This document shows, piece by piece, positions 5,135-22,640 of a DNA stretch of 64,000 nucleotides. Origin of the DNA: Salpingoeca rosetta (taxonomy: Eukaryota; Protista; Choanoflagellata); NCBI GenBank assembly GCA_033442325.1, contig JAWQFM010000004.1, positions 324,459 through 388,458 on the forward strand. The letters run 5' to 3'. Positions within the stretch are counted from its first letter, which is position 1, and every line of letters begins with the position of its first letter. The position numbers and the translations under genes are program-made. The notes beneath the pieces were generated by a model. The model did no database searches and was not told the origin of the DNA. It saw only the letters and a list, made by a program, of their open reading frames with translations.

Positions 5135-6397
5135 TCAGCAGCCAGGGTCGATGAGTAGCACATCCCCAGCGACGTGTGGAATGGCGTAGATGAGGCCATT
5201 GCTTGCGAGGACACCTTCATGCCACTTGTCGATGCCAGAAGTGACTGGAAGCGACGTGGTGTCGGTGGTGTTGGTTGCTGGGTCGATGATGAGGACAGAT
5301 TCCGCATTAAGCGGGATGCCGAAGATGTTGCCGTTTGGTGCAAGCACGCCGCCGAGCCACTTGGAACCGTCGCTCGAGAGGCCGGTGATGGCCGTCGTGT
5401 CGGCCGTGTTTGAGGTGGGGTCGATGACGAGCACTGTCGTGGCGGATTTCGGAATGCCGTAAATGAGACCGTTCCGCGCGAGCACGGTGCCAAACCACTT
5501 GCTGCTACCTGTCAACCCAGCAATAGATGTGGTGTCTGCGGTGTTCCTGGCTGGGTCGATGATGAGGACGGCGTTTGCGCTGTGTGGCACGCTGTAGATG
5601 AGCCCGTTGGCGGCTTGAACACCCCCGAACCATTTGAAGTAGTCCCCACCAAAGCCAGATATCGTCGTGACATCTGTGGTGTGGAGAGTGGGGTTGATGA
5701 CGAGCACAGAGCTTGCAGACCACGGAATGCCGTAGATGTGCCCGTTGTGTGCGGCAACCCCGCTCCTCCATTTTCCGCCACCGCCGCCGGAAGGCAGTCC
5801 GCCCAGGGTGGTGGTGTCCACGGTGTTTGCGCGTGGGTCAATGATGAGCACAGACGTTGCGCTTTCGGGAAACCCGTAGATGAGCCCGTTGTCGGCCAGC
5901 ACCCCGCCCGTCCATTTGCTGCCGCCTGCAGGCAAACCGGAGATGGATGTTGTGTCGGCGGTGTTGGTGGCAGGGTCGATGATGAGCACGGACGTGGACA
6001 AGTACGGGATGCCGTAGATGAGCCCGTTGTCGGCCAGCACGCCGCCAATCCAGCCGCGGTCCATCATGCCCATGTTTGGAATGGAAGTTGTCGTTGGCGG
6101 GAAGCGACGGCACAGCGCCTCGCGTTGCTCTTGCAACTGAATTGCCTGTCTTGACACCACACGCTGCTGTTCAAGCACAAGCGCGAACATCTTGCCCACG
6201 TCCACTCCGTTCACAAACACTGGTTCAGTCAGCGCATCGCTCGTGTTGATGTGCAGGGCGCCGCTCCCGTCCCGGCCAATGCCGACATCACCACTGAGCG
6301 CTGCAGTTTGGGGCAGTGGTGCGACAAGAAGAAGCAGCAGCAGCAGCAGCAGTAGACGCAGCGGTGGGAGGAAGAGGAGGAGGGCGAGGGTTGACAT
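5135..6397 (-). CDS. Secreted protein A: signal peptide, HINTSD..PVFVNG neck, short coiled coil, seven ~47-aa repeats (predicted 7-bladed beta-propeller)
   Basis: Leu-rich signal from ATG 6397; seven repeats of KWxGGVLAxNGLIYGIPxSAxSVLIIDPxTNTxDTT; ends IDPGC-stop; intronless. Confidence 0.85.
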   Translation of the reverse strand: MSTLALLLFLPPLRLLLLLLLLLLVAPLPQTAALSGDVGIGRDGSGALHINTSDALTEPVFVNGVDVGKMFALVLEQQRVVSRQAIQLQEQREALCRRFPPTTTSIPNMGMMDRGWIGGVLADNGLIYGIPYLSTSVLIIDPATNTADTTSISGLPAGGSKWTGGVLADNGLIYGFPESATSVLIIDPRANTVDTTTLGGLPSGGGGGKWRSGVAAHNGHIYGIPWSASSVLVINPTLHTTDVTTISGFGGDYFKWFGGVQAANGLIYSVPHSANAVLIIDPARNTADTTSIAGLTGSSKWFGTVLARNGLIYGIPKSATTVLVIDPTSNTADTTAITGLSSDGSKWLGGVLAPNGNIFGIPLNAESVLIIDPATNTTDTTSLPVTSGIDKWHEGVLASNGLIYAIPHVAGDVLLIDPGC

Positions 6398-6667
6398 GAT
6401 GATCTGTGGCTGGTGGGTTGTGGTGTTGTGCGTTTTGTTGGAGAGTGCGTCTTGGCATTTCGCTTTGCTTTTTGCCAGCAACAAGAGTGCTTACCACAGA
6501 GAAGCAGTGCTTGTCAATTCTGATTGTGCCGAGGCTCAAGAGACACTCAGCGTTCATTCATCCATCCACAAGAACACCGGCAGAAAGCAGAAGAGGAAGT
6601 CGAACACCCTGTCACTGACCCTTCCGTCGACAACAACGCAAACAAGCAAACACTGCCAAGAACAACA

Positions 6668-8866
6668 ATGTCCACGCCAAAGCCAACGACTGCAACCACA
6701 ACAACCACAACAGCAGCAGCGCCCATCTGCACGGATGGGGTGAGCACCTCTGCCATCAAGCGGTTCATGTCGCAGATCAAGGATTATCACCCCGACAACT
6801 ACAAGGAGGTGACGACGTACGATGCGTGCGTCAAGCCCGTGATCCACCGCACGAAGGAATGGAAGTGTTCGTACATCGATCTGCTGCGCAGGACAAAGCC
6901 AGAGGAAGTGGGACCAGCCACTGTGTTCGTGTCGCACGCCTGGCAGTACAAGATCTTCGATGTCCTCACCACCATGCTGGAATACGCCATGGAAGAAGAG
7001 AAGAGGCACAAGGATGACGATGGAACCAAGAAGGAGACGTTCTTCTGGTTTGATCTCTTCTGCAACAACCAGCACAAGGAATCGCTTCTGGGCCTGACGC
7101 CAGAACAGTGAGTTGTGTGTGCGTGTGTGTGGGGGGGGGGTGCGTTTGTGTGTGCGCGTTTGTTTGTTTGTTTGTTTGTGTGTGCATTTCATCCTGCTAC
7201 CTTAACGCGCGCGCGCACACACCCACACCCCCACACCCACACCCACACACACACACACACACACACACACACACACACACACACACACACACACACACAC
7301 ACACACACACCCACCCACACACACACACACACACACACACACACACACACACACACACACACACACACACACACACACACACACACACACACGCACGCAC
7401 ACACACATTCACACACACACACGTGTCATGGCAGGATTGGGGCCCCGTTCAAGAACGCCATTGCATCCATCGGCAAGGTGTTGCTTGTGCTGACGCCATG
7501 GAACAACCCCATCCCACTGACACGCGCGTGGTGCCTGTGGGAGATCTTCTGCGCCATCAGCCAGAGCAGTGACGACGTTGGATTGGAGATCAGGCTGCCG
7601 CAACGCCAGCGCATGAAGCTGAGGGAAGCCCTGCTTAAAACTCACAAGGCAATCACGAACATGCTGGTGGAGGTGCAAGCAGAGAAGGCGAAAGCATACA
7701 AGGAAGCAGACAAGAAGATGATCTTCCAAACGATTGAGAACAGCGTGGGCTTCGCTGAAGTGAACAAGGCGGTGAAAGGAAAGATGCGCACGTGGTGTTT
7801 GATGATGGCGAAGTCATTCGTGGAGGAGATGAAGACAGGAGACATCTCCCAAGAGTTTGCACCAATGTGTAACCGAGTGGGATTAGTCATGCATGACTTC
7901 GGAGAGCACGATAGCGCGGAGACATTCTTTCAGCAAGCGTTGGGTGTAGAACTGCTCATCTTCGGAGAGAAGCACCCCGACACCGCAACCACCTACAACA
8001 ACCTGGGCCTTGTGTACTTCAGCAAGTGCCAGTATGACCGTGCCATTCACTACTACCAGAAGTGCCTGCAGATCAAGCTGGACACGTTGGGGGAGAAGCA
8101 CCCCGACACCGCAACCACATACAACAACCTGGGCCAGGTGTACGACAGCAAGGGCGAGTATGACCGCGCCATCCACTCCTACCAGAAGTGCCTGCAGATA
8201 CAGCTGGACACGTTGGGGGGACAGCACTCGGAAACAGCTAGCACATACAACAACCTGGGTGGTGTGTACAACAGCCAGGGCCAGTACGACCGCGCCATCT
8301 ACTACTACCACAAGTGCCTGCAGATAGAACTGGACACGTTGGGGGAAGAGCATCCATCCACAGCAACCACATACAACAACCTGGCCAGCGGGTACACCCG
8401 CAAGGGCGAGTGTGACCGCGCCATCCACTACTTCCAAAAGTGCCTGCAGATCAAGCTGGATACGTTGGGGGAGAAGCATCCCTCCACAGCAACCACATAC
8501 CACAACCTGGGCCACGTGTACCACAGCAAGGGGGAGTACGGGAAGGCATTGACTGTGGTGCAACAAGCAGTTAGCATCTGGCTGGACACACTTGGCCCGG
8601 ACCACCCACACACCAAGATGGGACAGCAATCCTTGATTGCGCTGCTTCTGCAACAACCTACTGGGCCATCGACACAACAGCAAAAGTCCACCGCAACTCC
8701 CTCTGCTCAACAGCGACAACTCCCCACACAACGCAACCTCCTGCTTCGCTTCATCTCCGCTCAAGCCGTCCACCGATCCTCTGCGGCGCGTCGAAACCTG
8801 ATCCTGCGCTTCCTCTGCTCAGCACTGCATGCACACATGTCCCCAGCCTCTGCGGGGCGAGACTGA
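6668..8866 (+). CDS. TIR-like domain plus kinesin-light-chain-type (42-aa) TPR repeat protein
   Basis: Exons 6668-7107 and 7435-8866 (GTGAGT..GCAG, phase 2, in frame). TIR-like motifs TVFVSHAW, FFWFDLF, FKNAIASIGKVLLVLTPW, RAWCLWEI. About six 126-bp repeats LGEKHPDTATTYNNLG.VY..KGEYDRAI at ~7870-8640. Confidence 0.85.
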
Positions 8867-21990: not shown

Positions 21991-22347
21991 GAGGAAGAAG
22001 GCGAAGAAGAGCACAGATGGCGTCCACATTCATCCAAGCAAGCGGGCAACAGAGCGAGCAGGCAACAGAGCGAGCAAGCACTGGCTGGCTTGTTGCGGCA
22101 GTGTGGAGTGTGTGCGACAACACAAGAACTGCTGTGTACTGTGTTGTATTGTTTTGTCTTTTTGCTTTGTGCTGCAGGGCGGGAAAGTGCTTGCCAGAAA
22201 CGCAAGGATTTTCCTTCTCTGTCAACACGGCAAGCAAAGAAGGAAGCAAACAGCGTAGTGCGTTCTGTTGATGTGAGCGCCACTTTTCGCCAACAAGAAG
22301 CAAAGGACAGAAAAAAGGACAGACAACAAACAAGCAAGCAAACACAC

Positions 22348-22640
22348 TTGGATGGTTTGTGGATGCGATCACAAAGCAGGCCTTCCTCGCGTTCACGCAA
22401 GCCAGCAAGCAAGCAAGCACCTCGTCGTTGTGGTGCAACAATACAAGAGGGACACCTGCTGCGCGTGTATTATTGATTTGTTGCACAAGCAGTGGCAGCC
22501 ACTCCACGATGCAGTGGGCAATGGAACCGTGCTCTTGGTGTCGCACACATGGCGGTTCAAGAAAACGACGCACGTGCTGGACGTGTTCAGCGTGCTGTTG
22601 CTTTGAGAGTTGGCACATGAAGAAGGAGCAGGCAGCGCAA
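22348..22640 (+). pseudogene. Decayed 5' fragment of a TIR-like/TPR family gene
   Basis: CACIIDLLHK..DAVGNGTVLLVSHTWRFK..DVFSVLL aligns by eye with CSYIDLLRR..EVGPATVFVSHAWQYK..DVLTTML of the 6668 gene; stops and frameshifts present. Confidence 0.6.

What the first reader, a model, noticed from the sequence alone, without database searches (positions are those of the whole stretch)
5135..22640. Head-to-head propeller / TIR-TPR gene pair that recurs as a unit
Seen: propeller gene A (-) and the TIR-like/TPR gene (+) start only 270 bp apart (6397 and 6668). At ~21030-22640 a decayed propeller gene (-) again sits divergent from a decayed TIR-like 5' end (+). The two spacers share a loose motif (tttgcttt.tgc...agtgctt.cca near 6462-6497 and 22160-22197). 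Inference: a co-regulated two-gene module (extracellular binder plus intracellular TIR signaller) duplicated together, reminiscent of paired plant immune genes. Simple segmental duplication of neighbours is the null explanation.
Basis: partly seen in the sequence, partly recalled or inferred. Interest (0 to 1): 0.78.

Follow-up and report, generated by a model that had tools for sequence, protein, structure and literature searches.

The report
Head-to-head propeller / TIR-like gene pairs
In the choanoflagellate Salpingoeca rosetta, a secreted seven-bladed propeller gene and a cytosolic TIR-like/TPR gene sit back to back; a decayed second pair lies 14 kb away, but both genes belong to large clustered families and fewer than one gene in ten of either family is paired this way, so a dedicated two-gene immune module is not shown.

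Summary
Propeller A (5135-6397, minus) and the TIR-like/TPR gene (6668-8866, plus, one intron) have start codons 270 bp apart. At 20940-22634 lies a frameshifted propeller relic facing a relic of the TIR-like first exon (family HMM E 3.9e-4 and 2.5e-6; collinear DNA alignment z about 8). The shared spacer motif is not significant.

- The relic pair is not a copy of pair A. Its TIR-like piece falls in the family's main clade, not A's subclade.
- A's five closest TIR-like paralogues share at most 212 bp of upstream sequence and have no propeller within 1.5 kb.
- The one sure case of joint duplication is a block of at least 16.7 kb.
- Genome-wide, 5 of 69 TIR-like loci (4 independent) face one of about 112 propellers. 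About 1 is expected from local density (p 0.002-0.02).
- No propeller of this family lies near 80 environmental relatives.
- A TIR-TM-propeller fusion protein elsewhere in the genome hints at a functional link.

The assembly gap lies in the intervening NACHT-WD40 gene. Earlier scan notes on this same window flagged both families separately.

The parts
5135..6397 (-). Propeller A: signal peptide, long neck helix, seven-bladed beta-propeller, ending in IDPGC
   Evidence: ORF. Pfam DUF6923 38.3 bits against a cut-off of 27. AF2 model pLDDT 91.4 with seven 4-strand blades. Nearest solved folds: virginiamycin B lyase and the YVTN S-layer propeller.
6398..6667 (.). 270-bp divergent spacer between the two start codons (presumed bidirectional promoter plus both 5' UTRs)
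   Evidence: The part from 6456 to 6667 is shared with the upstream regions of the TIR-like paralogues L002-L004, which have no propeller.
6668..7107 (+). TIR-like/TPR gene, exon 1 (first half of the TIR-like domain; SHAW and WFDLFxNNQ motifs)
   Evidence: GT donor at 7108 read from the sequence.
7108..7434 (+). Intron with a (CA)n microsatellite, at the position conserved across the family
   Evidence: GT..AG and frame read. Same junction as in the database spliced model P0001.
7435..8866 (+). TIR-like/TPR gene, exon 2: second half of the TIR-like domain (RAWCLWE motif), helical linker, five TPR_12 units
   Evidence: Pfam TPR_12 2.8e-74; 66 genomic relatives.
9788..12430 (-). Intervening gene of unknown family (poly-Q tract; paralogue at 2052-4382), carried along in the block duplication
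   Evidence: no Pfam hit; 95.5% identical copy at C4:805730-809066.
13828..20312 (+). Intervening NWD1-like NACHT/WD40 gene (several exons; approximate bounds) that contains the assembly gap
   Evidence: HTH_NWD1 and WD40-type hits; ORFs.
18190..18801 (.). Assembly gap (612 N) inside the WD40 region
20940..22086 (-). Relic B, propeller pseudogene: full-length footprint, pieces in at least three frames
   Evidence: HMM E 3.9e-4; tblastn E 9.5e-5 in a 3.5-kb database; DNA z 6.0.
22087..22287 (.). Relic B spacer (about 200 bp)
22288..22634 (+). Relic B, fragment of a TIR-like exon 1 (main-clade type, VSHTWRFK). No exon 2 or TPR remains downstream.
   Evidence: HMM E 2.5e-6; DNA z 5.6; clade placement; no exon-2 hit; no TPR hit.
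5067..21750 (.). Block duplicated in inverted orientation at C4:813134-790007 (79-99.7% identity). It carries pair A, two other genes and at least the propeller relic of B.
42657..43805 (+). Intact propeller paralogue with no TIR-like neighbour
45605..46810 (+). Intact propeller paralogue with no TIR-like neighbour

Best explanation
This stretch is part of a fast-turnover island of expanded, immune-like gene families in Salpingoeca rosetta. The families are secreted seven-bladed propellers (about 112 or more copies), cytosolic TIR-like/TPR proteins (about 70), NACHT-WD40 proteins, and an unnamed family.

Genes in the island are born by block (segmental) duplication and die as pseudogenes. Pair A is one live head-to-head neighbour pair with a 270-bp shared spacer. 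Relic B is a dead pair of different family members. The whole block was later copied, inverted, about 480 kb away.

Shown: the gene models, both folds, the decay of B, the block duplication, the lack of pairing in A's closest paralogues, and a modest genome-wide excess of head-to-head pairs.

Inferred:
- The propeller is a secreted ligand binder.
- The TIR-like domain, with its invariant Glu in a WCLxE helix, signals or consumes NAD as TIR domains do.
- The TPRs act as sensor or scaffold.
- A 270-bp spacer implies a bidirectional promoter.

The pairing is best read as a recurrent but optional by-product of clustering, perhaps weakly favoured, and not as an obligate two-gene module.
For: Family sizes and clustering. 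C4 holds 37 of the first 105 propellers and C25 holds 16.

Block duplication with distinct outer flanks.

Relic B belongs to another clade.

Only 1 of 30 TIR-like loci has a propeller within 1.5 kb. Homology with the nearest paralogues stops inside the spacer. Two of the three intact propellers in the window are unpaired.

Local-density expectation is 0.8-1.1 head-to-head pairs, against 5 observed, of which 4 are independent.

No propeller of this family in 450 kb around 80 environmental relatives of the TIR-like domain.

Folds: TIR-like; propeller.
Against: The excess of head-to-head pairs is real on these numbers (p 0.002-0.02). The three nearest TIR-like/propeller neighbours genome-wide are all divergent, at 271, 523 and 732 bp. 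Counting relic B, the arrangement arose or persisted in at least two TIR-like clades.

A TIR-TM-propeller fusion exists (P0056), and a weak, below-cut-off TIR_2 hit faces a propeller at C35:478-480 kb. Both suggest that propellers and TIR-type signalling are functionally connected.

The propeller list is incomplete and gene density was assumed at 11,700 genes, so the null expectation is rough.
Confidence: 0.6

Rival explanations
1. A genuine co-regulated two-gene module. A shared bidirectional promoter drives a secreted propeller binder and a cytosolic TIR-like/TPR signaller, which act in one response (for example to bacteria). Selection keeps or re-creates the head-to-head arrangement.
For: The spacer is only 270 bp. 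There are five intact or half-intact pairs plus relic B, with spacers of about 200-730 bp, against about 1 expected. The fusion protein TIR-TM-propeller and a weak TIR_2 hit facing a propeller at C35 fit this idea. In fungi, the HET/PII-like adjacency that hints at functional coupling also involves only about 5% of family members (PMC10890737).
Against: The two products are topologically separated (secreted versus cytosolic) and neither has a membrane link. 93-96% of family members are unpaired. A's closest paralogues lack the partner. Two of six pairs have decayed partners (relic B; C4:1574741 carries a TGA and has no exon 2). No pairing was found outside S. rosetta. The spacer motif is not significant. 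The divergent-versus-tandem count for upstream neighbours is 5:1, or 4:1 for independent cases, which is not significant.
Confidence: 0.25
2. Pure chance neighbours, with part of the 'recurrence' produced by the assembly: the C4:790-813 kb copy would be a mis-assembled second version of the same locus.
For: The copy is riddled with unread runs (C4:792640-803083, 804379-804478, 810874-811624), one of them exactly over the TIR-like exon. Parts are 99-99.7% identical. Without the copy, only 4 pairs remain.
Against: Identity varies from 79% to 99.7% along the block. The outer flank differs: window 1-5066 has no counterpart beyond C4:813134. The copy is inverted and on the same contig. Relic B and the pairs on C25, C20 and C4:1574 kb do not depend on it. 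P(>=4 | 0.8-1.1) is still 0.01-0.02.
Confidence: 0.1

Closest known systems
Plant head-to-head paired NLR genes (RPS4/RRS1, RGA4/RGA5, Pik-1/Pik-2; from my own knowledge)
   Same: Divergent orientation with a short shared promoter region. One partner carries a TIR-type domain. The pair sits in a cluster of rapidly duplicating immune-type genes.
   Different: Neither partner here is an NLR (no NB-ARC or NACHT). One partner is secreted. The pair is not inherited through the gene family. No genetic interdependence is known.
Fungal het-B locus and HET/PII-like gene adjacency (PMC10890737); HET domain as a TIR relative (PMC4986451)
   Same: A TIR-related death or signalling domain is combined with a binder: Bh is HET plus a lectin fold. 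The adjacency to a partner family involves only about 5% of members yet recurs in distant lineages. The motif layout (S-H/Y-x-W; W-x-D...N/I-Q; R-x-W-x-x-x-E) recalls HET, and HET-like proteins are reported in choanoflagellates, haptophytes and stramenopiles, the same range as this domain.
   Different: Pfam HET does not match this family (one search is uninformative). The binder here is a separate secreted propeller, not a fused lectin. The C-terminal part is TPR. No allorecognition role is known.
TIR domains (plant RPP1/RPS4/SNC1, SARM1, MyD88, ThsB) and nucleoside 2-deoxyribosyltransferases
   Same: These are the best structural matches of the N-terminal domain by two independent aligners (Foldseek prob 0.96; VIA Z 7.6-6). 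An invariant Glu sits in a WCLxE helix after the third strand, as in the plant TIR motif (own knowledge).
   Different: No Pfam TIR match for the window's gene. The domain is about 240 residues with an extra N-terminal helical part and a long C-terminal helical extension. Z below 8 is not decisive. Activity is untested.
Toll-like receptors of animals and choanoflagellates (LRR-TM-TIR; PMC6040629)
   Same: An extracellular repeat binder plus an intracellular TIR. The fusion protein P0056 (TIR-TM-propeller) realises this logic with this same propeller family.
   Different: In pair A the two parts are separate proteins in different compartments. The ectodomain is a propeller, not LRR. P0056 has type II topology with the TIR at the N-terminus.
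Vgb / YVTN-type seven-bladed propellers (virginiamycin B lyase 2z2n, archaeal S-layer 1l0q, Lp49 3bws); Pfam DUF6923
   Same: Fold and blade number. Relatives are common in Leptospiraceae and other bacteria.
   Different: The eukaryotic members have a signal peptide, a neck helix and a C-terminal IDPGC, and are expanded to more than 100 copies. No enzymatic residues were assessed.

Membership tests
TIR domain (Pfam TIR PF01582 / TIR_2 PF13676) | Sequence match to the family model above its cut-off | tested here: not met
   No hit for either exon even at E 10. Among 15 relatives, one reaches TIR_2 at E 0.0078. A PDB profile search gives PdTIR 3h16 at E 0.68.
TIR domain (Pfam TIR PF01582 / TIR_2 PF13676) | Flavodoxin-like alpha/beta fold of TIR/STIR type | tested here: met
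   AF2 model of an intronless relative, pLDDT 92.7. The top Foldseek hits are all TIRs (E about 0.01, prob 0.96). VIA wide search: Z 7.6-6 for RPP1, MyD88, SARM1, SpbK, ThsB, NDT and SEFIR. The scores are modest, and the model is of a relative, not of the window's own protein.
TIR domain (Pfam TIR PF01582 / TIR_2 PF13676) | Catalytic glutamate at the TIR active-site position | tested here: inconclusive
   E154 is invariant in 79 sequences, within RAWCLxE on the helix after strand 132-136. No residue-level superposition was available.
TIR domain (Pfam TIR PF01582 / TIR_2 PF13676) | NAD-cleaving or adaptor activity | not testable with these tools
   Needs biochemistry.
HET domain (PF06985) | Match to the Pfam model | tested here: not met
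   None of 15 members matches at E <= 1. The genome scan found nothing, but its control also rang nowhere.
Head-to-head paired immune genes (plant paired-NLR type) | Divergent orientation with a short shared intergenic region | tested here: met
   270 bp; other pairs at about 200-730 bp.
Head-to-head paired immune genes (plant paired-NLR type) | Both partners are NLRs | tested here: not met
   DUF6923 propeller, and TIR-like domain plus TPR_12.
Head-to-head paired immune genes (plant paired-NLR type) | The pair is inherited as a unit (partners co-duplicate) | tested here: not met
   A's closest paralogues are unpaired. Relic B belongs to another clade. The only joint copy is a multi-gene block.
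Head-to-head paired immune genes (plant paired-NLR type) | Functional interdependence or co-expression | not testable with these tools
   No expression data were reachable.
DUF6923-type seven-bladed beta-propeller | Pfam match over the cut-off and seven blades | tested here: met
   38.3 bits against 27; seven 4-strand blades in the model.
Segmental duplication | At least 1 kb at 90% identity or more, at a second locus with different flanks | tested here: met
   Window 5067-20336 matches C4:813134-791346 in pieces of 92-99.7% identity. A further 1.3 kb matches at 79%. The outer flank is unrelated.

The most novel reading that the evidence does not exclude
Salpingoeca rosetta uses this propeller family as a pattern-recognition module wired to TIR-type signalling in three formats: fused (TIR-TM-propeller), head-to-head with canonical TIR genes, and head-to-head with an unnamed HET/TIR-like-TPR family. 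The bidirectional pairs would then be co-induced binder-plus-signaller units: an LRR-free counterpart of Toll-like recognition in the closest relatives of animals.
Probability: 0.2. Interest if true: 0.7.

Novelty: new member of a known kind. Interest (0 to 1): 0.4.

Why it matters
Choanoflagellates are the reference point for how animal innate immunity arose. If the pairing were functional, it would tie a large family of secreted propellers to a TIR-related enzyme or adaptor family that no domain library names, although that family has about 4,650 sequence clusters across eukaryotes. That would give a tractable two-gene locus to test in a genetically manipulable organism.

As things stand, the main value is descriptive. 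It is an island of birth-and-death gene families, with one live pair, one dead pair and one block duplication. The locus also points to two better leads: the unnamed TIR-like domain and the TIR-TM-propeller fusion.

Tried and rejected
1. Plain tblastn of A's exon 1 against 20-23.5 kb missed the relic. A family HMM found it.

2. The spacer motif as a regulatory element was rejected. It is a post hoc pattern, z is 1.3-2.8, and the best spacer match is a low-complexity block that also matches several unrelated loci.

3. Relic B as a decayed local copy of pair A was rejected.

4. Pfam naming of the N-terminal domain gave nothing. A PDB profile search was swamped by TPRs or gave only PdTIR at E 0.68.

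5. HET membership: no match.

6. Bridging the assembly gap failed. The paralogous NLR at 26.9-31.9 kb is too divergent, and the second copy is unread at that place.

Adjacency therefore rests on coordinates from searches, and no trees exist for the pairs on C25, C20 and C4:1574 kb.

The exons were searched separately by reference. The fold was taken from an intronless environmental relative (L065:2392-3192) and the exon junction from a database model of a paralogue (P0001).
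Full report
**Source.** The window is C4:324459-388458 of a 55.4-Mb, 68-contig genome. Database proteins identical to loci of this genome are named Salpingoeca rosetta with PTSG_ tags. It is a eukaryote with introns and abundant (CA)n microsatellites, so mechanical ORFs serve only as guides.

**Gap.**
- 18190-18801 is 612 N.
- It lies in a plus-strand NWD1-like NACHT/WD40 gene. HTH_NWD1 lies in 16324-17805, and WD40-type propeller matches lie on both sides of the gap (17327-18187 and 18804-20309).
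- The open frames left and right of the gap differ. With an estimated gap length, in-frame continuity cannot be decided.
- The second genomic copy is unread over a larger run at the same spot (C4:792640-803083), but it keeps both flanks in the same order and orientation.
- Neither gene pair touches the gap.

**Pair A.**
- Propeller A (5135-6397, minus; 420 aa) has a hydrophobic N-terminus and matches Pfam DUF6923 (38.3 bits, cut-off 27).
- Its AF2 model (pLDDT 91.4) shows a signal-type helix, a long helix at 67-98 and seven four-stranded blades.
- The nearest solved folds are virginiamycin B lyase, an archaeal YVTN S-layer propeller and leptospiral Lp49.
- Relatives are common in bacteria such as Leptospiraceae and in eukaryotes.
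- The partner gene starts 270 bp away at 6668.
- I read its model as exon 1 6668-7107, a GT..AG intron 7108-7434 filled with (CA)n, and exon 2 7435-8866. The junction matches the database model of a paralogue (P0001).
- Exon 2 carries five TPR_12 units (2.8e-74).

**The 'TIR-like' domain.**
- Neither exon hits any Pfam family, even at E 10.
- The domain (about 240 aa) is nevertheless very widespread. There are 4,654 representative clusters at E <= 1e-3 in a library of 1.84 billion proteins.
- Atlas neighbours are mostly haptophyte, oomycete, diatom and green-algal proteins, often with TPR_10/12.
I folded the same domain from an intronless environmental relative (L065:2392-3192, from P0032). 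The model is confident (pLDDT 92.7, pTM 0.89).
- Foldseek's top matches are all TIR domains: RPPT, RPP1, SNC1, RPS4, then MAL, SARM1, AbTir, ThsB (E about 0.01, prob up to 0.96).
- An independent all-against-representatives search gives Z 7.6-6 for RPP1, MyD88, SARM1, SpbK and ThsB, plus nucleoside 2-deoxyribosyltransferases and SEFIR.
- These scores are modest, but the two lists agree.
- Invariant residues are H74, W76, Q108, P143, R148, W150, C151 and E154, in the motifs SHAW, WFDLFxNNQ and RAWCLxE.
- The Glu sits on the helix after the third strand, where plant TIRs carry their catalytic Glu in WCLxEL. That comparison is from my own knowledge and was not superposed here.
- The motif layout also recalls the fungal HET domain. 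Dyrka et al. linked HET to TIR and found HET-like proteins in choanoflagellates, haptophytes and stramenopiles (PMC4986451). Pfam HET does not match this family, however.
- Conclusion: this is a TIR-superfamily fold, not a member of a named family.

**Relic B.**
- Family HMMs were built from 29 TIR-like exon-1 sequences and 30 propellers of this genome and run on the six-frame translation of the whole window.
- After the intact genes, the next hits were 22277-22603 (plus; E 2.5e-6, HMM positions 34-88, including VSHTWRFK) and the frame 21355-20321 (minus; E 3.9e-4).
- One collinear DNA alignment links 5139-7008 to 20940-22634. Its score is 847, against 470 +/- 48 for shuffles and 295-590 for unrelated segments.
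- The propeller part (z 6.0) spans almost the full gene length. The TIR-like part gives z 5.6.
- The propeller pieces lie in several frames. No exon-2 or TPR remnant follows. B is therefore a dead head-to-head pair with a spacer of about 200 bp.

**Was the pair duplicated as a unit?** Three tests say no for a two-gene unit.
1. B's TIR-like piece is 43-45% identical to main-clade members (E about 1e-8) but 27% to A's partner. DNA scores agree (391 against 251). In an ML tree it falls on the main-clade side of a 96/95 split, apart from A's 100/100 subclade, although on a long branch. B's propeller is no closer to A than to many other paralogues.
2. Of the 30 TIR-like loci closest to A's partner, only the window's own has a propeller within 1.5 kb.
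3. Homology between A's partner and its three nearest paralogues (80-83% nt) ends at 6456, 6548 and 6636. That is inside the spacer and short of the propeller.

What was copied together is a much larger block. Window 5067-21750 matches C4:813134-790007 in inverted order. Identity by segment:

| Segment | Identity |
|---|---|
| Propeller A | 98.7% |
| TPR region | 99.7% |
| Unnamed gene (9788-12430) | 95.5% |
| NACHT-WD40 gene | 92-97% |
| Propeller relic | 79% |

The outer flank is unrelated. In that copy the TIR-like exon lies in an unread run.

**Genome-wide adjacency.**
- Exon-1 and exon-2 searches give about 70 TIR-like genes. Three searches give about 112 propellers, concentrated on C4, C25 and C35.
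- Head-to-head pairs less than 1.5 kb apart:
  - the window's pair;
  - its block copy;
  - C25:88073-88474 / 88997-90235;
  - C4:1574741-1574998 / 1573068-1574009, where the TIR-like piece has a TGA and no exon 2;
  - C20:about 17329 / 17896-19113, where the TIR-like core lies in a gap.
- I took the local propeller density within 20-50 kb of each TIR-like gene and assumed 11,700 genes. The expected number is 0.8-1.1. The observed number is 5, or 4 if the block copy is not counted (p 0.002-0.02).
- The upstream-neighbour orientation count (5 divergent, 1 tandem) is not significant by itself.
- 93% of TIR-like genes and about 96% of propellers are unpaired.
- In 450 kb around 80 environmental relatives of the TIR-like domain, no propeller of this family was found.

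**Other links between the propeller family and TIR.**
- P0056 (PTSG_02868; C4:1718159-1720098) is one protein with an N-terminal TIR, a transmembrane helix and a C-terminal propeller of this family ending in IDPGC.
- Its TIR_2 score is 25.3 bits by hmmscan and 29.3 bits in the genome scan, against a cut-off of 28.
- A weak TIR_2 hit at C35:480205-480468 (22.3 bits, below the cut-off) faces a propeller 325 bp away.
- I found no mention of PTSG_02868 in the searchable literature. The choanoflagellate TLR survey does not describe these architectures (PMC6040629).

**Verdict.**
The strong interpretation is not shown.
- The best reading is a birth-and-death island of immune-like families in which head-to-head propeller/TIR-like neighbours occur somewhat more often than expected but are optional.
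- A functional bidirectional module remains possible (about 0.25).
- The nearest analogy is fungal HET-domain genes and their recurrent neighbours (PMC10890737), more than plant paired NLRs.

**Limits.**
- As a result, the other pairs could not be sequenced into trees, and the null model is approximate.

Noticed in passing
G000:C4:1718159-1720098 (protein P0056, PTSG_02868): A single protein with an N-terminal TIR (TIR_2 at about the cut-off), one transmembrane helix and a C-terminal propeller of this same family. This is a Toll-like receptor logic with a propeller in place of LRRs and type II topology. No paper in the searchable library mentions it.
   Followed up: partly
G000:C35:478609-480468: A weak, below-cut-off TIR_2 hit (plus) lies head-to-head with a propeller gene (minus), 325 bp apart.
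   Followed up: no
window 6668-7900; relatives P0154-P0298, L066-L145: The N-terminal domain of the TPR gene is a very large eukaryotic family with no Pfam model: 4,654 representative clusters. Invariant residues are H, W, Q, P, R, W, C and E. It has a confidently predicted TIR-like core and is often fused to TPR_10/12.
   Followed up: partly
window 7108-7434; L008, L009, L021, L023: The family's single intron sits at a fixed position (after ...LPQEW) and carries a (CA)n or (TG)n microsatellite in the five members read. In several paralogues it stays open in frame, giving misleading 900-1000-aa open frames.
   Followed up: partly
window 5067-21750 against C4:790007-813134: Identity along the duplicated block swings from 79% to 99.7%, and about 800 bp of non-coding DNA after the TPR stop codon is 99.7% identical. 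This suggests gene conversion between the copies, or a layered history.
   Followed up: no
window 2052-4382 (plus) and 9788-12430 (minus): Two paralogous long genes with no Pfam match. The second has a very long poly-Q/(CAG)n tract and (CA)n runs. It is part of the same island and of the block duplication.
   Followed up: no
G000:C25:88073-90235 and C25:490494-497268: Two TIR-like genes have nearly identical search statistics, and so do two propellers. They lie head-to-head at one site and convergent about 3 kb apart at the other. This may be a duplicated neighbourhood with a rearrangement.
   Followed up: no
window 22650-26900: About 4 kb downstream of relic B has no recognisable gene. It holds only poly-Q/poly-N tracts and microsatellites, before the next NLR gene starts near 26.9 kb.
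   Followed up: no
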